Position numbers and translations under genes: made by a program. 64,000 bases of DNA. It comes from Octopus vulgaris (taxonomy: Eukaryota). This document shows positions 7,866-59,577 of this stretch, piece after piece. The stretch is taken from positions 84,072,001 to 84,136,000 of the forward strand of contig OX597825.1 in assembly GCA_951406725.2 (NCBI GenBank), written 5' to 3'. A model generated the notes under the pieces. That model was not told the origin of the DNA. It did not search any database and worked only from the letters and a program-made list of their open reading frames with translations. How positions within the stretch are numbered: the stretch's first letter is position 1; each line of letters starts with the position of its first letter.

Positions 7866-7893
7866 TATATATATGTATATATATATATATATA

Positions 7894-8102
7894 TAGTAAA
7901 TCCCCAAAACGATGAACGAACACAAAAAACAAAAACGCGAGGACGTGGTACATATAAAGTATTAGCAGACGCTCAGGGAAGGAAAGAGAGATGGTTTAAC
8001 GTTTCGTGCAACGCTCTTCTTCAGGAACGGAGGAAAGTCCAATCGAAAGGAAGACAGAGGAAGAATATCGCCAACGATTCACATGTGATTACATTTTGAA
8101 AT
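7894..8102 (-). mobile_element. Hammerhead-bearing repeat, HHR family 2 (copy 1)
   Basis: Collinear with 27583-27798. The minus strand contains GUUC-CUGAAGA-A-GAGC GUU GCAC-GAAA-CG-UU-AAAC at about 7993-8029. Confidence 0.7.
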
Positions 8103-8771
8103 GTATATATGGGTGTATACACATACACGCACACACAACGTAAGCGTTTGGTTATATGAGAGAATAAGAAATCTGAACTTGTGGTAGTTTATAATTTCCT
8201 GTTCCTGTGGGTCTTTCTGTACTGATCGTATGATATGGTGCATGTTTTGAGGTCATCACTGTCTAATCTGATCTTAGTGCAATTAGTTGTTCTGTGGTGA
8301 GGTTGTAAATTTTGTGTTACTAAGTGGATATCGTGTACACAATAAAATAATTTAGTCTAAAATGTGTTTTTAAACGTTAATATTGTATTGTAGTATTTTA
8401 AAGATTTTGTGACTTGTTTTACAAAATTTGGCTTCATTAGTAACGTCACTGTTGGAAAGTAATCTCACGACAACCATTAGAAAGTTGTCATCAACCACAT
8501 AGCTATGAATCGAAAAAGAAAATAACAAAAATTATTTCATTCACACACAAAAAAAACGAACAAAAAACATGAAGGAACCATCGAGGAAGCACCATTTTAT
8601 TTAAAGTGACATTATTATTGACAGCAAAATGAAAAGAAAAAATCTAAAAAAACAATTATTAAGAGCTAAAAAAATAATTCAGTGCTTCTATCATTTTTTG
8701 TTTTTACAAGTCATAAATTCCAACCGCTTTTCCAATTTTTCCACCCATACAAAATTTTATTATCTCTATCG

Positions 8772-9894: not shown

Positions 9895-10340
9895 TATATA
9901 TATATACATACATACATATATGGCCGCAGCCTTCGGGTTGAAACATTTTTAAGGATTTAAGGATTTTATATATACAAGAATTTGGTAGACGGAAACTGAA
10001 AGAATCCCGTCATATATACATGCATACATACATATACACACACACACATTCACACATTCACACACACGCACAAACACACACAAACACACACACACATGTG
10101 CATATATTTGTGCATGCGTTTGTGTCTGGTGTCTGTAGTAAGTGGACAGTTAGGTAATTATGAGAACTAGTTAGTTTTGACAGTTCTATATGCCCACTAC
10201 GCCATATGTTCAAGGACATATGGCGTAGTGGCTAAGAGCACAGGCTACTAACCCCAGGATTCCGAGTTCGATTCCAGGCAGTTACCTGAATAATAATAAT
10301 AATAATAATTTATTTTTTATTCTATTTAATTTTTTTTTAG

Positions 10341-10483
10341 ACATCCTCTAGTACAACACAAAAAACAACCAAATATATGGCACACTAGGCATAACAACAA
10401 CGTGAACTTCCAACCTGTTGTCTCTTGAGGTCTCTGGGTGTGACTTGGAGCCAACTTGTAAAAATATAAAGCAAAAGTCAAAC

Positions 10484-10520
<37 letters not shown>
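10341..10520 (+). mobile_element. LINE-like 3' end with (TAA)n tail, inserted in a (TAA)n run (R4/Dong-like by target)
   Basis: About 150 bp of non-repetitive sequence flanked on both sides by TAA/AT-rich runs and ending in (TAA)n. The clade is inferred from target preference only. Confidence 0.4.
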
Positions 10521-10522
<2 letters not shown>

Positions 10523-10573
10523 CAACAACATCGAAAAATACCTTAGCAATGATAAGGTTCGAAATTTCCCGAA

Positions 10574-10619
10574 GACACCTGATGAAGACTGGAGGCTATA
10601 TCAGCCGAAATGTTGTGTT
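10574..10619 (+). ncRNA. Hammerhead motif, HHR family 4 (decayed copy)
   Basis: GACAC-CUGAUGA-A-GACUG..CAGCC-GAAA-UG-UU-GUGUU. It has one helix II mismatch, and the helix III palindrome is mutated (ACGU to AUGU). Confidence 0.65.
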
Positions 10620-11675
10620 AACAACAAACAAGATGAGGACAAATATCCGTCAAATGTAAATAATGTAAATTATGTAGTTAGTTTTTTGAATTAGGATGTA
10701 CACTTAGCTTAAACCTTAGCTTGCTCAAGCTGCTAGTTTGTGGGATCGATCACTATACGCCGTAATTGCAAAGCAAACTTCTGAATCACTGGGCCATGTC
10801 TTAAAACACCGATGATGAAAGTAATAATTGTTTTGTTATAGAATTATATCTTTCTCTAAAAGTTTATCGTTAATATCATTACTTGTCTAATATTCACGTG
10901 AGACTATTTTCTGTAATCAACCATACAGATTGGTTAAAGCGTAAAGTATTTTCTGAGAATTGATCTGAAGATTGATAACCGTTTATAGAAGATTGATATG
11001 TATATTAAATCAATGACGTTTCCATCTGTAGCAGAGACAATCACCAGTATTTCTATGGAGATTATCTACTTGAAGCAAAAATCCAATTCTAGAAAACTCA
11101 ATTTGAATAAACTTACGGGAAAATATAGTTTCAACAGCATTCATTCTTATTGTTTTCGATAATATTGTTTATATATTTGATATCGTCAAGATGTATTCTC
11201 CCGCGTTCCATTCAGGTAGAAAGAAATAAAGGCACACACAAATACGAACGTACAAGTGAATAGAAACACAGAACTACAAGTACATACAAACGCAAAACGC
11301 TCACAGATGCGCGCATATGAACGGGCAAACACGCACGCAGAAATATACTGCGGAATAATAATTGTAAAAAATAAGTACCATTTAAATATAGATAACAATA
11401 ACGACACGTTCTCATATACAGACCACTTCACACACACACACACACACACACATGCAATGACTCACACACATACACATACATACTTGTACATTTATTTCAC
11501 ACTTTAATTATCAAAAAATGCATAGATTCAGAAAATGGCATTCATACATACTTCCTACTATAGAAGCGCGTGTATACAGATATACATACATCGATGAATA
11601 AGCATAAGGAGAATGAAAGGAGGAAGGAAATTTACTATCAGTTTGGAGTTTCTTTGTCTTTGCCTCCTTATATAG

Positions 11676-12081: not shown

Positions 12082-12243
12082 AGGCGCAGGAGTGGTTGTG
12101 TTGTAAGATAGCTTGTTTACCAACCACATGGTTTCGGGTTCAGTCCCACTGCGTGGCACCTTGGGCAAGTGTCTTCTACTATAGCCTCGGGCCGACCAAA
12201 GCCTTGTGAATGGATTTGGTAGACGGAAACTGAAAGAAGTCTG

Positions 12244-17858: not shown

Positions 17859-18230
17859 GACACTTTGTCGGTTATGACGACGAGGGTTCTAGTTAATCCA
17901 ATCAACGGAAGAGCCTGCTCTCGAAATTAACGTGCAAGTGGTTGAGCACTCCACAGACACGTGTACCAGTAACGTAGTTCTCGGGGAGATTCAGCGTGAC
18001 ACAGAGTGTGACAAGGCTGTCCTTTTGAAATACAGGTACAAGAGAAACAAAAAGAAAGAGTGAAAGTTGCGGTGAAAGAGTACAGCATGTTTCGCCACCA
18101 TCCCCTGCCGGAGCCTCGTGGAGATTTAGATGTTTTTGCTCAATAAACACTCACAACGCCCGATCTGGGAATCGAGACCGCGATCCTACGACCGTGGGTC
18201 CGCTGTCCTAACCACTGGTCCATTGCGCCT
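17859..18230 (-). mobile_element. tRNA-derived SINE family C, full length
   Basis: Collinear with 6456-6793 and has a tRNA-like head. Confidence 0.88.
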
Positions 18231-18349
18231 GCACAAATCTTCATATAACAGTGTCTAGATATAGCATTACTCAGAAAATTTTGCATCAAAAATATCTCAT
18301 GTCACGAGCCAGAACAGTGAATATTCAATAAAAACTTCTGATCTTTGAA

Positions 18350-18528
18350 AAACTTTGTTCACATTTACATTATGTACATTATTTACATTTGACAGATATT
18401 TGTCTTCATCTTGTTTGTTATTAGCACAACGTTTTGGCTGATATACCCTCCAGCCTTCATCAGGTGTCTTGGGGAAATGTCGAACCTGGATTCTCATTCC
18501 TAAGGTATTTTTTCGATGTTATTATTAC

Positions 18529-18609
<81 letters not shown>

Positions 18610-18612
18610 CAT
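18350..18612 (-). mobile_element. Family G tail with hammerhead (HHR family 4) and (TAA)n linker
   Basis: Minus 18468-18424 reads GACAC-CUGAUGA-A-GGCUG..CAGCC-AAAA-CG-UU-GUGCU (G12 mutated to A). Flanks match 10525-10680. Confidence 0.75.
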
Positions 18613-23964: not shown

Positions 23965-24390
23965 GGAGGCGCAGGAGTGGCTGTGTGGTAAGTAGCTTGC
24001 TTACCAGTCACATGGCTCCGGGTTCAGTCCCACTGCGTGGCACCTTGGGCAAATGTCTTCTACTATAGCCGCGGGCCAACCAAAGCCTTGTGAGTGGATT
24101 TGGTAGACGGAAACTGAAAGAAGCCCGTCGTATATATGTGTATATATATGTGTGTGTGTGCGTGTATATTTGTGTGTCTGTGTTTGTGAGTGGATTTGGC
24201 AGACGGAAACTCAAAGAAGCCTGTCGTATGTACATATATATGCTTGTGTGTCTGTGTTTGTCCCCACCACCTTCGCTTAACAACCGATGTTTGAGTGTTT
24301 ACGTCCCCGTAACTTAGCAGTTCGGCTAAACAACCCGGTAGAATATATACTAGGCTTACAAAGAATAAGTCCTGGGGTCGATTTGTTCAA
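23965..24390 (+). mobile_element. SINE family A with an internal duplication of about 50 bp
   Basis: TTGTGAGTGGATTTGG(T/C)AGACGGAAACT..AAGAAGCC occurs twice, near 24088 and 24183. Confidence 0.9.
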
Positions 24391-27582: not shown

Positions 27583-27798
27583 TAGTTAATCCAAACAAGA
27601 AAGCACAAAAAAACACAACAGCGCGAGGACGTGGAACAAATATAGTATTATTGGACGCTCAGGAAAGAAGGAAAGAAGGAGGGTTTAACGTTTCGAGCGG
27701 AGCTCTTCGTCGGTAATATAGGAGTAGGAAAGATCCAGAGAAGGGAAGACAGAGGAAAAAAAATCGCCAACGGTACACACGAGGTCACATTTTGAAAA
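27583..27798 (-). mobile_element. Hammerhead-bearing repeat, HHR family 2 (copy 2)
   Basis: Minus 27717-27683 reads CCGACGA-A-GAGC UCC GCUC-GAAA-CG-UU-AAAC. Helix II is perfect, the core has U4C and helix I is degraded. Confidence 0.7.
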
Positions 27799-43737: not shown

Positions 43738-45019
43738 CTGTATGCTTGAAAGTATACGTAATTAATTCTTGTGCTGGTACAAAGCCAAATATTTGCAAGA
43801 GAGGAGCAATAATCGATTGAATAGATGACAATGTATTCTGAGGATTTATTACTTCGACTGCAGACGAAATGTTAAGTCAACGCTGATGATATTTCAACTG
43901 AAAATAGTAAGTGATTTAACTAAATCCTCCAATTTATTTAGTCACTCATTTTTGGCACTTAATCAGGATTAAGAAAGAAGCTTATACTTAGATGCATGAC
44001 TTGCTGAATATAGTAGCCAAATCTACTATATTTAAGTTTGGGAGAAACATCAATGTGTCTCTGATTTAAGGTGGCAATGTCGTAGGTATACTATTGCTCG
44101 TATAGTTGTTTTATCACTAATTGGTAAAAAAAAAAATTCAGTTGAGATATGATGTTAACGTTCAAAGAAGGCGAAGATTGCTGTTGTATTGCTGGATAGG
44201 AGACTGAATATTATGAAATCCTGTTTCATCCATGCTAGAAGACGATACATATTACGAAAAGGCTGAAAAATAGAACCAACAGAAATTAATGGAAAACTTT
44301 ACAATTTTTACAGTTTCACCAAAAAAGTTTAACCGGTAAAGGAATGTGATAACAAAGTTTAGAAGCCATTCATGTATCGTAATGTAAATACATTGTGATA
44401 AGCAAAATTTACGGCAGTATTCGACCGGGGACAATATTTTCTGTGGACGCACTGTGTTTAAAACACAGTATCTGTATCAGAAGACGAACTCCAGCAGCGG
44501 CGATTAAAAGCGAATGAGAACCTTGTTTTTACCAACAGTTCATAAGAACATTATATAACATGTGAGACATGCAAAGAATGTACAATTTTATGTATCGATA
44601 TTTTCACACTAAATAGTTTAAAATTAGGGCCAACAGTATCTGACCCATCATGGAATTAGCGTCTGAGTTTTGTAGACAATTGAAACAACTGCCAAAACGC
44701 ATTAAATTTTATAAATAAGAGATAGCTTTGATAAATGAAATTACCTTCCGAATACGTCAATGAAAACAAAATTTGATGTACTCAAATTTTATACCAACAA
44801 CATTCATGATTATAAAATAAAAGCGATGGAATCGTGGATGGAGAGATTCTCTGATAAATTACCAAAAGTATAGAAATAAATTAATAACTGAAGAATTACA
44901 ATTTATTCTCGAAAATAACAATTCTGTATTTACTGTTAATTATTATCGACAATCTTGTTTATTTATTGATCCCATCTGATATTTACTTCATATTACATAA
45001 ATATGTTATTGATTGTGAG

Positions 45020-45398: not shown

Positions 45399-45722
45399 CG
45401 AGGTGGTATCAAAACATTTCTGGACTGGTTCTCTAGTGTGCCAACATATGGAAGCACATGGTTATGTGTGCAACGAGAGCTAACAGAGAGCTTCATGAGG
45501 CAGTGTGTCGAGTGACATCGCTGTGTTTATTTCTCAGGTTGTGGAATTTGTGTTTTTGTGATCACGTGTATGCTGTAGTCTGCGATTTTGTCGTAGACAG
45601 GAACGAAGAGCCAACGTGAAATTTTGTGTTAAACTTAGGAAGTCTGTTACTGAAACACTGAGCATGCTTCGGCAAGCTTACGGGAACGAGTCCAAGGGTC
45701 GAACGCAATGTTTTGAGTGGCA
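45399..45722 (+). mobile_element. mariner-like transposon 5' fragment
   Basis: Terminus CGAGGTGGTATCAAAACATTTC and N-terminal RANVKFCVKLRKSVTETLSMLRQAYGNE..RTQCFEWH. Confidence 0.85.
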
Positions 45723-45724
45723 TC

Positions 45725-45880
45725 TTTCGGCTGATATACCTTTCGGCCTTCATCAGGTGAAGGCTGGAGAGTATATCAGCCGAAACATTGTGTTAACAAC
45801 AAACGAGATGAGGACAAATACCCGTCAAATGTAAATAATGTAAATAATGTACATAATTCCTCTTCTCTTAAATATAGAAC
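45725..45880 (+). mobile_element. Family G / HHR family 4 tail preceded by an inverted partial copy
   Basis: TTTCGGCTGATATAC (45725-39) pairs with GTATATCAGCCGAAA (45771-85). The minus copy carries CAC-CUGAUGA-AGGC, and the plus copy starts at AAGGCTG. Confidence 0.8.
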
Positions 45881-46991
45881 TATATCTCCATAAATATATA
45901 TTCTTTCGGGACTAAGGGATGCATTTCATCTCTTTTCAGTGATTCTCGTCACGACTGACCCTTTAGGCGAGTAAAAATATACAGGCCAATGTATACGTGG
46001 AAATGTGACCATAATAATAAAAAAAAAAACCATAATTCAAATGACAGTTCTTTCAGTAACAGATGGAGACAAAGATCTATAATGTTAGTTCCTCAGTTCA
46101 CCACAGAAAACATTATTCTAAAAGCCAAAATAAACACGAAACCTTACCGTCGCACACTATGTAAGAAAATATCAAGGAGAGCCTAGGATATAATACGTAC
46201 GATGATGCAAAAGACCGGAGCATGAAAAATATATGAGATTTAAAAAGAAACACAGAAACAAAAAGAAAAAAATGAAAATATAATATGGAGTTTTAGAAGC
46301 AGGAAATGGTATAATGTATACAATACGTAATGATGAAAACGAAAATCATATAAATAATAAATACTTAGAAATAAAACGGCTTAAGAATCATGGATGTTTA
46401 TAATTATAATTAAAGAAAACCTTTCAAGAAAACATGAGAACTTTCTCGTAAGTAGAGAGAAGACCTACTGAGGTAATCGCAAGAACTTTCTGGAAAAGAA
46501 AAGAACCCCAGAACAATCCGAAACACGATGTCATCTTAAAATACGATAAAGGATAGAAAAAGAAATGTAAGGAAAGGTAAATACGGAAAAAATAAAAGTG
46601 AGCGATGTATATATGAAAACACTTGCGGAATCAAGAGAGATAAGTATTGACAACAATGTTAGCCGTAAAGATTTATGTAAATGAAAGGAGAAAAACCAAA
46701 ATAAACAACAACATGACTATGAGAAGAAAACATGGCGTATTATATAAAAGAAACAATAGCAAAAAAAAGACAAAAAAGAAATGATTGTGCATGATGTAAA
46801 AACTGAGATGGAGAAATATACAACAAGAACAAGAGCAACAAAACATAGAAATCTGCAAACAAAGTTGGTGGGAAGAAATGCACGGATAACTAAATTAGAG
46901 CTCACAGATATATATCAAAGAAATAATCAGATTAACCAATATTGTAATTCAACAAATCTTATTAGACATTGGCAATGATTTATACACACAC

Positions 46992-55505: not shown

Positions 55506-55906
55506 AGCGGAGTGGCTGTGTGGTAAGTAGCTTGCTTACCAACCACATGGTTCGGGTTTCAGTCCCCACTGCGTGGCACCTTGGGCAAGTGTTTTCTACT
55601 CTAGGCTCGGGCCGACCAAAGCCTTGTGAGTGGATTTGGTGAACGGAAACTAAAAGAAGCCCGTCGTATATATGAATATAGGCATGTGTGTGTGTGTGTG
55701 TGTGTGTCTGTGTTTGTCCTCCCCTCCAACATCGCTTGAAAACCGATGATGGTGTGTTCACGTCCCCGTAAATTAGCGGTCCGGCGAAAGAGACCGATAG
55801 GATAAGCACTAGGCTTACAAAGAATAAGTCCTGGGATCGATTTGCTCAACTAAAACCAGTGCTCCAGCATGGCCACAGTCAAATGACTGAAACAGGTAAA
55901 AGAATA
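55506..55906 (+). mobile_element. SINE family A, full length
   Basis: Collinear with 12082-12497 and includes the terminal GAAACAGGTAAAAGAATA. Confidence 0.92.
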
Positions 55907-59198: not shown

Positions 59199-59577
59199 TT
59201 TTATTCTTTTACTTATTTCAAGCATTTGACTGCGGCCATGCTGGAGCACCGCCTTTAGTCGAACAAATTGACTCCAGAACTTATTCTTTGTAGGCCTAGT
59301 ATTTATTCTATCAGTTTTTTTTGCCGAACTGCTTGGTTATGGGGACTCAAACACACCAAAACCCGTTTCCAAGCGATGGTGATGGTGGGGAAACAAACAC
59401 AAGCACACACACTCGTATACATACGACCGACTTCTTTCAGTTTCCTTCTACCAAATCCACTCCCAAGGCTTTGGTCGGCCCGAGGCTATAGTGGAAAACA
59501 CTTGCCCAAGGTGCCAGGCACCCGGAACCATATGGTTGGGAAGCAAGCTTCTTAACACACAGCCACTCCTGCGCCTA
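59195..59577 (-). mobile_element. SINE family A, near full length
   Basis: Reverse complement of the family-A consensus, with a small deletion in the head. Confidence 0.9.

What the first reader, a model, noticed from the sequence alone, without database searches (positions are those of the whole stretch)
10221..10680. Possible tRNA-headed SINE whose 3' tail is a hammerhead-containing, Penelope-type terminus
Seen: a Pol III-type head with A and B boxes (10221-10290), then (TAA)n, then a tail of about 150 bp containing the family 4 hammerhead. The same (TAA)n-plus-tail unit recurs at 18350-18612(-), and the tail alone at 45760-45880. The three copies carry different single lesions, so their consensus is a perfect GACAC-CUGAUGA-A-GGCUG..CAGCC-GAAA-CG-UU-GUGUU. 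Established: SINE tails normally derive from LINE partners such as L2, CR1 or RTE. Inference: this SINE may instead borrow a Penelope-like 3' end and be processed by its own ribozyme. Head-tail linkage rests on one locus here, and that locus is interrupted.
Basis: partly seen in the sequence, partly recalled or inferred. Interest (0 to 1): 0.75.

Follow-up and report, generated by a model that had tools for sequence, protein, structure and literature searches.

The report
Hammerhead-tailed SINE with Penelope-type insertion scars
The window holds three dead copies of a very abundant short retroposon that joins a tRNA-type promoter head to a tail carrying a minimal hammerhead ribozyme motif, and its insertion scars suggest that Penelope-like elements, not ordinary LINEs, copy it.

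Summary
Head and tail belong to one element. In the window, one 9-bp target duplication (10170-10178 / 10677-10685) encloses both, and the "interruption" is a younger retroposon nested in the internal (TAA)n.

In the genome (2.8 Gb, probably an octopus), 26 of 30 head-seeded loci have a co-oriented tail. 20 of 30 tail-seeded loci have a co-oriented head. The 40-nt ribozyme region occurs 14,470 times at up to 3 mismatches, against 0 for the control.

The motif meets the published description of the minimal hammerhead of Penelope-like elements (PLEs). It has no helix III hairpin, a palindromic ACGU, an unpaired A before stem II and a 5-bp helix I.

The insertions carry PLE hallmarks:
- head-to-head twin copies inside a single 10-15-bp duplication;
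- a 37-nt terminal extension on exactly one outer end (23 of about 24 twins);
- a 4.4-unit tandem array.

A control SINE shows none of the twin copies (0 of 27).

Not shown: no autonomous PLE or LINE carrying this tail was found. The dominant, apparently intact PLE has a different hammerhead module. Cleavage and Pol III transcription are untested.

It is a new member of a known kind, closest to schistosome Sm-alpha and to animal retrozymes.

The parts
10170..10178 (.). 5' target-site duplication GTTAGTTTT of copy 1
   Evidence: Identical 9-mer at 10677-10685; sequence
10180..10191 (-). Reverse-complement fragment (ACAGTTCTATAT) of the 37-nt terminal extension, lying 5' of the head and inside the duplication
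   Evidence: The same arrangement is seen in L010, L059 and L051.
10192..10207 (-). Inverted 16-nt fragment of the head (reverse complement of ATATGGCGTAGTGGGC). It is a minimal inverted arm.
   Evidence: (hairpin picked up as a pseudo-miRNA)
10216..10289 (+). Pol III-type head. A box at 10221-10231 and B box at 10265-10275, 44 nt apart.
   Evidence: (91% to the head consensus). No cloverleaf by ARAGORN or Rfam.
10290..10309 (+). First block of the internal (TAA)n microsatellite
10310..10487 (-). Nested younger retroposon that interrupts the (TAA)n. Its A-rich tail reads as T-runs on the + strand.
   Evidence: at least 854 first-look candidates in the genome; 40 scored at 95-98% identity
10488..10528 (+). 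Second block of the internal microsatellite, (TAA)n(CAA)n
   Evidence: The same junction is seen in most genomic copies.
10529..10676 (+). Tail of copy 1 (consensus positions 1-152), with no 3' extension
   Evidence: 93% to the consensus
10574..10619 (+). Minimal type I hammerhead motif: GACAC / CUGAUGA / A / GACUG-loop-CAGCC / GAAA / UGU / U / GUGUU. It differs from the consensus at two stem positions (G10.2>A, C15.2>U) and once in loop 2.
10677..10685 (.). 3' target-site duplication of copy 1
18363..18612 (-). Copy 2: long (TAA)n plus tail, with no head (5'-truncated in the microsatellite). The hammerhead at 18423-18468 has G12>A and a helix I change.
45725..45759 (-). Foldback fragment of copy 3: reverse complement of tail positions 53-87, overlapping the start of the forward arm
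45760..45883 (+). Copy 3: tail truncated at position 61 (inside the ribozyme), ending in the 37-nt extension at 45844-45883
   Evidence: 96% to the consensus

Best explanation
The finding is a high-copy composite non-autonomous retroposon with at least about 14,000 ribozyme-bearing copies.

Its parts, 5' to 3', are:
- an 83-bp head that keeps tRNA-type internal Pol III A and B boxes but no cloverleaf;
- an internal (TAA)n(CAA)n tract of variable length;
- a 147-bp tail with a minimal type I hammerhead motif about 57 nt from its end;
- on some copies, a further 37-nt terminal extension.

Most likely mechanism:
- Pol III transcribes the unit from the head (inferred).
- The RNA is copied into the genome in trans by the reverse transcriptase and GIY-YIG endonuclease of Penelope-like elements (inferred from the scars).
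- The endonuclease makes nicks staggered by 10-15 bp. The duplications are shown; the enzyme is inferred.
- In roughly four events in ten, reverse transcription is primed at both nicks. This gives two copies head-to-head with their 3' ends outward. One is primed at the extreme 3' end and so carries the extension. The other is primed at the internal AAUGUAAAU repeats.
- Template switching, or a multimeric or circular template, occasionally gives tandem arrays.

The hammerhead has no helix III hairpin. It could cleave only when two motifs pair, either in tandem transcripts or between two RNAs. It may serve mainly as the fold that the Penelope enzyme recognises.

The three window copies are inactive relics. 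One is interrupted by a nested insertion and two are 5'-truncated.
For: Linkage of head and tail:
- 26/30 head-seeded and 20/30 tail-seeded loci are linked.
- Single duplications enclose whole units in the window (GTTAGTTTT), in L017 and in L010.
- A tandem array of 4.4 full 240-bp units has its first unit truncated inside the ribozyme.

Abundance: 848 exact 46-mers and 14,470 40-mers at up to 3 mismatches, with controls at 0.

Ribozyme type:
- The consensus has the full conserved core, a 5-bp helix I, a 5-bp helix II, an unpaired A before stem II, a palindromic ACGU in place of helix III, and U17.
- These are the features listed for PLE minimal hammerheads in PMC4209133.
- The descriptor finds 36 sites against 0.37 in shuffles.

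Penelope-type scars (as described in PMC8557442):
- 34 of 76 heads have an inverted same-family neighbour at the 5' end. The figure is 0 of 27 for a CORE-type control SINE in the same sequences.
- About 24 twin complexes were found, and 23 carry the 37-nt extension on exactly one outer end. This is far from the half expected if the two ends were independent.
- Duplications of 10-15 bp enclose at least 9 of 18 whole complexes.

A supply of enzyme exists. There are 5,955 GIY-YIG candidates, including many copies with an open 781-aa frame carrying RT plus a C-terminal GIY-YIG domain. These elements have their own minimal hammerhead in a conserved 125-bp 3' module.
Against: - No autonomous element carrying this tail was found. 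The tail has no similarity to 30 PLE loci or to the dominant PLE 3' module (z = 0.37).
- Genome-wide pattern searches for the tail start or the ribozyme with non-SINE upstream sequence gave only 18 and 122 heterogeneous hits, with no recurrent junction.
- The dominant PLE uses a different core variant (U3-A8) without the unpaired A.
- Rfam hammerhead and tRNA models do not match.
- A large subfamily, including the young tandem array, carries an A-C mismatch in helix II.
- Genomic copies show no extra conservation of the ribozyme.
- The unit RNA is no more structured than shuffles (z = -0.01).
- The double-hammerhead fold (-22.7 kcal/mol) is less stable than two monomers (-27.2).
- The sampled loci are the best-scoring matches, not a random sample.
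Confidence: 0.72

Rival explanations
1. It is an ordinary tRNA-type SINE mobilised by a conventional LINE. The hammerhead-like motif is either fortuitous or an inert relic.
For: - The 3' end is a short tandem repeat (AATGTAAAT)n of variable copy number, as in L019. Many stringent LINE/SINE pairs end this way.
- Duplications of 10-15 bp are also typical of LINEs.
- No PLE with this tail was found.
- The descriptor has a false-positive rate of about 1 per Mb, so some repeat family could carry the motif by chance.
Against: - Twin copies with both 3' ends outward hold the same sequence twice, so L1-type twin priming on one RNA cannot make them.
- They occur at 34 of 76 heads, against 0 of 27 for a control SINE.
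- The one-sided 37-nt extension and the tandem array are described for PLEs, not LINEs (PMC8557442).
- The motif has PLE-specific details beyond the core: the unpaired A and the palindromic ACGU.
- No recurrent LINE junction was found upstream of the tail or the ribozyme.
Confidence: 0.12
2. It is primarily a retrozyme. Tandem genomic copies are transcribed, the hammerheads cut out a 240-nt unit, a tRNA ligase circularises it, and rolling-circle reverse transcription spreads it. On this reading the Pol III head is incidental.
For: - A tandem array of 240-bp units exists with a 5' end truncated at an arbitrary point.
- The unit size falls in the 170-400-nt range of animal retrozymes (PMC7761336).
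- Schistosome repeats with a full tRNA are already counted among putative retrozymes (PMC4918200).
Against: - Most sampled copies are dispersed monomers or inverted twins. Only 1 of 60 seeded loci held a tandem array.
- The unit RNA is not rod-like (z = -0.01), unlike the described retrozymes.
- Insertions end at a fixed 3' region, not at the cleavage site.
- The intact A and B boxes in the consensus argue that the head matters.
Confidence: 0.12
3. Head and tail are two independent elements. A hammerhead element targets (TAA)n microsatellites, which happen to be the 3' ends of an older tRNA-SINE.
For: - PLEs have a microsatellite insertion bias (PMC8557442).
- The junction is always a (TAA)n(CAA)n tract.
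- Tail-only copies begin in a microsatellite (L003, L008, L013, L019).
- A few heads end in (TAA)n without a tail (L037, L039, L046).
Against: - Single duplications enclose head plus tail.
- The tandem array repeats the whole unit with only (TAA)3.
- Twin complexes duplicate head and tail together.
- 26 of 30 heads carry a tail.
This may describe how the family first arose, but not how it spreads now.
Confidence: 0.04

Closest known systems
Sm-alpha / Sj-alpha SINE-like retroposons of Schistosoma
   Same: Both join a tRNA-derived Pol III head to a hammerhead ribozyme motif in a short, very abundant element found dispersed and in tandem (PMC2770079; PMC4918200).
   Different: The schistosome elements keep a full tRNA-Gln and a canonical type I hammerhead, said in PMC2770079 to be retrieved with the Rfam motif. 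Here the head is not a recognisable tRNA, and the ribozyme is the minimal, helix III-less type that Rfam does not detect. The host phylum also differs. Sequence homology was not tested.
[quoted passage not shown]
   Same: [quoted passage not shown] Both show frequent pairs of motifs on opposite strands 100-700 bp apart, and thousands of dispersed copies (PMC4209133).
   Different: Those dispersed copies were interpreted as truncated PLEs. Here the carrier is a discrete element with its own Pol III head. Helix II is 5 bp, against 7-8 bp in the schistosome families.
Animal non-LTR retrozymes, proposed to be non-autonomous PLE derivatives
   Same: Both are short non-coding hammerhead-bearing units that can form tandem arrays and have no coding capacity. 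A PLE origin or dependence is proposed for retrozymes (PMC7761336; bioRxiv 10.64898/2026.07.22.740005).
   Different: Retrozymes are defined by tandem organisation and rod-like circular RNAs. This family is mostly dispersed, its unit RNA is not unusually structured, and it has a Pol III head.
Non-autonomous Chlamys elements such as MRC1 (Craig et al. 2021)
   Same: Both are short non-autonomous elements showing PLE-type pseudo-LTR and head-to-tail insertions (PMC8557442).
   Different: The Chlamys elements share 3' sequence with an autonomous family and have no Pol III head. Here no autonomous element with the same 3' end was found.
Octopus tRNA-derived SINEs OK, OR1 and OR2 (Ohshima and Okada 1994)
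   Same: They are tRNA-type SINEs of octopus. The family studied here may be one of them or a relative.
   Different: This could not be checked, because the paper is not held. At least one of OR1 and OR2 is a CORE-SINE. This family has no CORE domain. The CORE-like SINE in the same loci served as the control.

Membership tests
SINE, tRNA type (SINE2) | Internal Pol III A and B boxes at tRNA-like spacing | tested here: met
   TGGCGTAGTGG fits TRGCNNAGTGG. AGTTCGATTCC fits GGTTCGANNCC at 10 of 11 positions. The two start 44 nt apart. The box consensus sequences are from my own knowledge.
SINE, tRNA type (SINE2) | Short, non-coding, dispersed and high-copy, flanked by target duplications | tested here: met
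   The unit is about 240-330 bp. 14,470 ribozyme regions occur at up to 3 mismatches. Duplications are 9-15 bp.
SINE, tRNA type (SINE2) | Head recognisably derived from a tRNA | tested here: not met
   ARAGORN finds nothing even at 60% thresholds. There is no Rfam tRNA match at E up to 10. Derivation rests on the promoter boxes only. A resemblance to tRNA-Arg recalled from memory is a lead, not a test.
SINE, tRNA type (SINE2) | 3' tail shared with an autonomous partner | tested here: not met
   Searches found no partner.
SINE, tRNA type (SINE2) | Transcribed by Pol III | not testable with these tools
   The consensus sense strand has no run of four T, which is compatible but not significant.
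Hammerhead ribozyme, minimal type I (PLE type) | Conserved core C3 U4 G5 A6 N7 G8 A9, G12 A13 A14, A15.1-U16.1 and H17 | tested here: met
   Met in the family consensus and in 848 exact genomic copies. Among the window copies, copy 2 has a core change (G12>A) and copy 3 lacks the 5' half. Copy 1 keeps the core but has helix II and helix III changes.
Hammerhead ribozyme, minimal type I (PLE type) | Helices I and II paired; helix III reduced to a palindrome usable only in a dimer; unpaired nucleotide 5' of stem II | tested here: met
   GACAC/GUGUU, GGCUG/CAGCC, ACGU and an extra A. Matches the description in PMC4209133.
Hammerhead ribozyme, minimal type I (PLE type) | Match to curated hammerhead covariance models | tested here: not met
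   No Rfam hammerhead hit at gathering score or at E up to 10. This is expected for a motif without helix III.
Hammerhead ribozyme, minimal type I (PLE type) | Self-cleavage | not testable with these tools
   The predicted double-hammerhead is less stable than two monomers. PLE minimal hammerheads are reported to cleave poorly in vitro (PMC4209133).
Element mobilised by Penelope-like elements | Inverted copy adjacent at the 5' end, within one insertion | tested here: met
   34 of 76 heads, against 0 of 27 for the control. Single duplications of 10-15 bp enclose whole complexes.
Element mobilised by Penelope-like elements | 30-40-nt extension present at only one end of the insertion | tested here: met
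   A 37-nt extension lies on exactly one outer end in 23 of about 24 twin complexes (L020 was resolved by its duplication).
Element mobilised by Penelope-like elements | Partial tandems (pseudo-LTR-like) | tested here: met
   4.4 x 240 bp array with a 5'-truncated first unit. Such arrays are rare in the sample.
Element mobilised by Penelope-like elements | 3' sequence shared with an autonomous PLE of the same genome | tested here: not met
   Endonuclease-bearing PLEs with open 781-aa frames are present, but they carry a different 3' module.
Animal non-LTR retrozyme | Tandem repeats of 170-400 nt, each with a type I hammerhead | tested here: inconclusive
   One array among 60 seeded loci. Most copies are dispersed.
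Animal non-LTR retrozyme | Unit RNA highly self-paired | tested here: not met
   MFE is -47.6 kcal/mol against a shuffle mean of -47.6, z = -0.01.
Animal non-LTR retrozyme | Accumulates as circular RNA | not testable with these tools
   No transcript data are available.

The most novel reading that the evidence does not exclude
This may be a clear natural case of a Pol III-driven SINE whose partner is a Penelope-like element rather than a LINE. If so, the thousands of 'orphan' minimal hammerheads scattered in animal genomes are partly SINE tails rather than truncated PLEs. The hammerhead fold, not shared sequence, would be what the Penelope enzyme recognises. The twin insertions with a one-sided extension would then record a two-ended priming mechanism at thousands of independent sites.
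Probability: 0.45. Interest if true: 0.7.

Novelty: new member of a known kind. Interest (0 to 1): 0.55.

Why it matters
SINEs are textbook partners of LINEs. How Penelope-like elements integrate, and what their hammerheads are for, remain open questions (PMC8557442, PMC4209133).

A short, very abundant element with PLE-type scars gives thousands of small, easily aligned insertion events. Nick spacing, two-ended priming, the one-sided extension and tandem formation can all be read from them.

It also offers a compact substrate of about 250 nt for a retrotransposition or cleavage assay.

It would also help annotate the large fraction of "unclassified SINEs" reported in octopus genomes (PMC13282606).

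Tried and rejected
- Rfam at gathering and E-value thresholds, and ARAGORN at default and relaxed thresholds, recognise neither a hammerhead nor a tRNA.
- Partner search, part 1: the GIY-YIG Pfam search gave 30 PLE loci, none with tail similarity. Local alignment of the tail to the dominant PLE 3' module gave z = 0.37.
- Partner search, part 2: patterns demanding non-microsatellite sequence before the tail start, or non-SINE sequence before the ribozyme, gave only heterogeneous hits. A tblastn with the PLE protein found only a decayed RT fragment at window 44564-44952, unrelated to copy 3. Ten window ORFs have no relevant Pfam domain.
The count of the helix II variant subfamily, a head count and a tandem-junction count were therefore not obtained.
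- Conservation of the ribozyme among copies was uninformative, as expected for neutral decay.
- Retrozyme-like rod structure is rejected.
- A BLAST of the second hammerhead-like repeat was swamped by microsatellites.
- The Ohshima and Okada 1994, Ferbeyre 1998 and Lunse 2017 papers are not held.
Full report
**What is in the window**

The window is G000:C12:84072001-84136000 of a 2.8-Gb, 227-contig eukaryotic genome. From its size, chromosome number and SINE content I infer an octopus. This was not tested.

At 10216-10289 there is a head with an A box (TGGCGTAGTGG, 10221-10231) and a B box (AGTTCGATTCC, 10265-10275). The two start 44 nt apart, as in a tRNA gene.

A (TAA)n tract follows. A 178-bp insert at 10310-10487 breaks it, and it resumes as (TAA)n(CAA)n. 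The insert is itself a young dispersed retroposon, with at least 854 candidate copies at 95-98% identity. The interruption is therefore a later nested insertion.

The tail runs from 10529 to 10676 and holds the hammerhead motif at 10574-10619.

The 9-mer GTTAGTTTT occurs at 10170-10178 and again at 10677-10685. Head, microsatellite and tail thus arrived as one insertion.

Two short inverted pieces lie between the upstream duplication and the head:
- the last 12 nt of the family's terminal extension (10180-10191);
- 16 nt of the head (10192-10207).

Copy 2 (18363-18612, minus strand) is (TAA)n plus tail without a head.

Copy 3 (45760-45883) starts inside the ribozyme. A 35-nt foldback of the same region precedes it (45725-45759), and it ends in the full 37-nt extension.

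**Is head-tail linkage general?**

The tail alone has 1,651 first-look candidates in the genome and the head has 1,263. I compared the 60 best loci with a consensus of head and tail.
- 26 of 30 head-seeded loci have a co-oriented tail within 900 bp.
- 20 of 30 tail-seeded loci have a co-oriented head. The others begin in the microsatellite, as expected for 5' truncation.

These are best-scoring loci, not a random sample.

A tandem array on contig 22 repeats the whole 240-bp unit (head, (TAA)3, tail positions 1-147) 4.4 times. Its first unit is truncated inside the ribozyme.

The idea that head and tail are separate elements meeting at microsatellites is therefore rejected as a present-day mechanism. 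It may still describe the family's origin.

**Abundance and age**

The 46-nt consensus ribozyme occurs 848 times exactly. The 40-nt core region occurs 14,470 times at up to 3 mismatches. The reversed control patterns occur 0 times.

Eighty-four aligned copies differ from their consensus by about 5-8% per site. The ribozyme is no better conserved than the rest, which is what neutral decay after insertion predicts.

**The ribozyme motif**

The consensus reads GACAC CUGAUGA A GGCUG-GAGGGUAUAU-CAGCC GAAA CGU U GUGUU. This gives:
- the full conserved core;
- a 5-bp helix I and a 5-bp helix II;
- an unpaired A before stem II;
- U17 at the cleavage position;
- the palindrome ACGU with no loop in place of helix III.

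Cervera and de la Pena describe exactly this architecture for the minimal hammerheads of Penelope-like elements. [quoted passage not shown] They also note pairs of motifs 100-700 bp apart on opposite strands (PMC4209133).

Rfam's hammerhead models do not match, as expected without helix III.

A descriptor written for this architecture finds 36 sites in 346 kb of fetched sequence, against a mean of 0.37 in block shuffles. A chance match in one 270-bp consensus is therefore unlikely, though not impossible across a whole repeat library.

Thermodynamic prediction does not favour the double hammerhead (-22.7 kcal/mol against -27.2 for two monomers). A large subfamily, including the young tandem array, has an A-C mismatch in helix II. 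Whether the motif cleaves is open.

**Insertion scars**

Many copies sit head-to-head with an inverted copy, with both 3' ends pointing outward. 34 of 76 heads have an inverted same-family neighbour at their 5' end. The figure is 0 of 27 for a CORE-type SINE present in the same sequences.

I found about 24 distinct twin complexes.
- Duplications of 10-15 bp enclose at least 9 of the 18 whole complexes examined, so each complex is one event.
- 23 carry the 37-nt extension (ATAATGTACATAATTCCTCATCTCTTAAATATAGAACTGT) on exactly one outer end. L020 was resolved by its duplication AATCTTGCTTAT.
- If the two ends were independent, about half would be expected to show this.

In single copies without a 3' extension, a reverse-complement stub of the extension can abut the head. 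This is seen in the window, L010, L059 and L051. It looks like a twin whose inverted arm is almost fully truncated.

Craig et al. list these traits as typical of Penelope-like elements and not seen in LINE integration: partial tandems, an adjacent inverted 5'-truncated copy, and a 30-40-bp extension present at only one end (PMC8557442).

L1-type twin priming cannot explain the twins, because both arms contain the same sequence.

**The enzyme source**

The GIY-YIG Pfam model finds 5,955 candidates. Many copies have an open 781-aa frame with a reverse transcriptase followed by a C-terminal GIY-YIG domain.

Subfamilies of this element differ in most of the 3' UTR but share a terminal module of about 125 bp. 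That module holds a minimal hammerhead of the U3-A8 core variant: UUGAUAA GGUUC-loop-GAACC GAAA CAUGU U/A. The stems are conserved and the loops vary. This variant is known from Cercyon PLEs.

This module has no sequence similarity to the SINE tail.

Pattern searches for the tail start, or for the ribozyme, preceded by non-SINE sequence gave 18 and 122 hits. All had different upstream sequences or were internal deletions of the SINE.

No autonomous element, PLE or LINE, carrying this tail was found. Either the donor lineage is rare or extinct, or recognition depends on fold rather than sequence.

The search was cut short.

**Retrozyme reading**

The 240-nt unit between two cleavage sites folds no better than shuffles (z = -0.01), unlike the rod-like retrozyme RNAs. 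Tandem arrays are rare in the sample. A circular-RNA route may exist for tandem copies, but it is not the main picture.

**Comparison with what is known**

Hammerhead-bearing, tRNA-derived SINE-like elements are known from schistosomes (Sm-alpha and Sj-alpha; PMC2770079). They are counted among putative animal retrozymes (PMC4918200).

Animal retrozymes have been likened to SINEs (PMC7761336). A 2026 preprint proposes that they are non-autonomous PLE derivatives.

No held paper links an octopus SINE to a hammerhead or to PLEs. A recent Octopus vulgaris repeat annotation reports 11.6% SINEs, mostly unclassified, and does not mention ribozymes.

I therefore rate this a new member of a known kind. 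Its useful extra is a clean, quantifiable PLE-type insertion signature attached to a Pol III-headed element.

**Verdict**

- It is a SINE with linked head and tail: about 0.95.
- It is mobilised by Penelope-like machinery: about 0.7.
- The ribozyme actually cleaves in vivo: about 0.35.

Noticed in passing
window 10310-10487: A young short retroposon is nested in the SINE's (TAA)n. Its A-rich tail reads as T-runs on the + strand. The genome has at least 854 candidates at 95-98% identity. Its family was not identified.
   Followed up: partly
window 27690-27725 (-) and 7876-8116; also L038 near 1768, L077 and L037: A second short repeat carries a hammerhead-like motif of the same layout: CUGA(A/C)GA, an unpaired A, GAGC..GCUC, then GAAACGUU. 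The window copy has U4>C. The copy near window 27700 is flanked by microsatellites on both sides.
   Followed up: partly
L067, L072, L080, L086 and other PLE loci: The dominant Penelope-like family has many open 781-aa frames (RT plus C-terminal GIY-YIG). It has a conserved 125-bp 3' module with a U3-A8 minimal hammerhead and ends in (TA)n. L073 shows two such 3' modules facing outward, like the SINE twins.
   Followed up: partly
L069 455-545 (+) and the inverted partner about 250 bp away: A third hammerhead type occurs as an inverted pair next to a PLE 3' end. It has CUGAUGA, a very long helix II, and the palindromic ACGAUCGU as helix III.
   Followed up: no
window 44564-44952 (+): A decayed fragment of a PLE reverse transcriptase (tblastn E = 7e-9), about 800 bp upstream of copy 3 and not contiguous with it.
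   Followed up: no
window 45598-45723 (+): An open frame reads RRANVKFCVKLRKSVTETLSMLRQAYGNESKGRTQCFEWH. From memory it resembles the N-terminal helix-turn-helix of mariner transposases. It is cut off by copy 3. This was not tested against Pfam.
   Followed up: no
window 12084-12237, 23969-24134, 55509-55670, 59433-59574 and others: Copies of a different tRNA-type SINE with a CORE-like segment (CTTGGGCAAGTGTCTT). It served as the control family, and none has an inverted twin.
   Followed up: partly
head consensus, first 16 nt (for example L091 2926-2941): The family consensus itself begins with a small palindrome, TATGCCC-AC-GGGCATA. The source copy may have fixed a miniature inverted arm at its 5' end.
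   Followed up: no
window 18200-18232 (-): Another Pol III-type head (GGCGCAATGGACCAGTGGTTAGGACAGCGG) lies just downstream of copy 2 on the minus strand. It belongs to a different SINE.
   Followed up: no
L003 1150-1330: A tail-only copy sits behind a long (TAA)n. That tract follows what looks like the C-terminal coding end of a LINE (...LQKTALLGTARILRKVLE...). This is probably an insertion into that element's microsatellite tail, but it is the one place where a LINE lies directly upstream.
   Followed up: no
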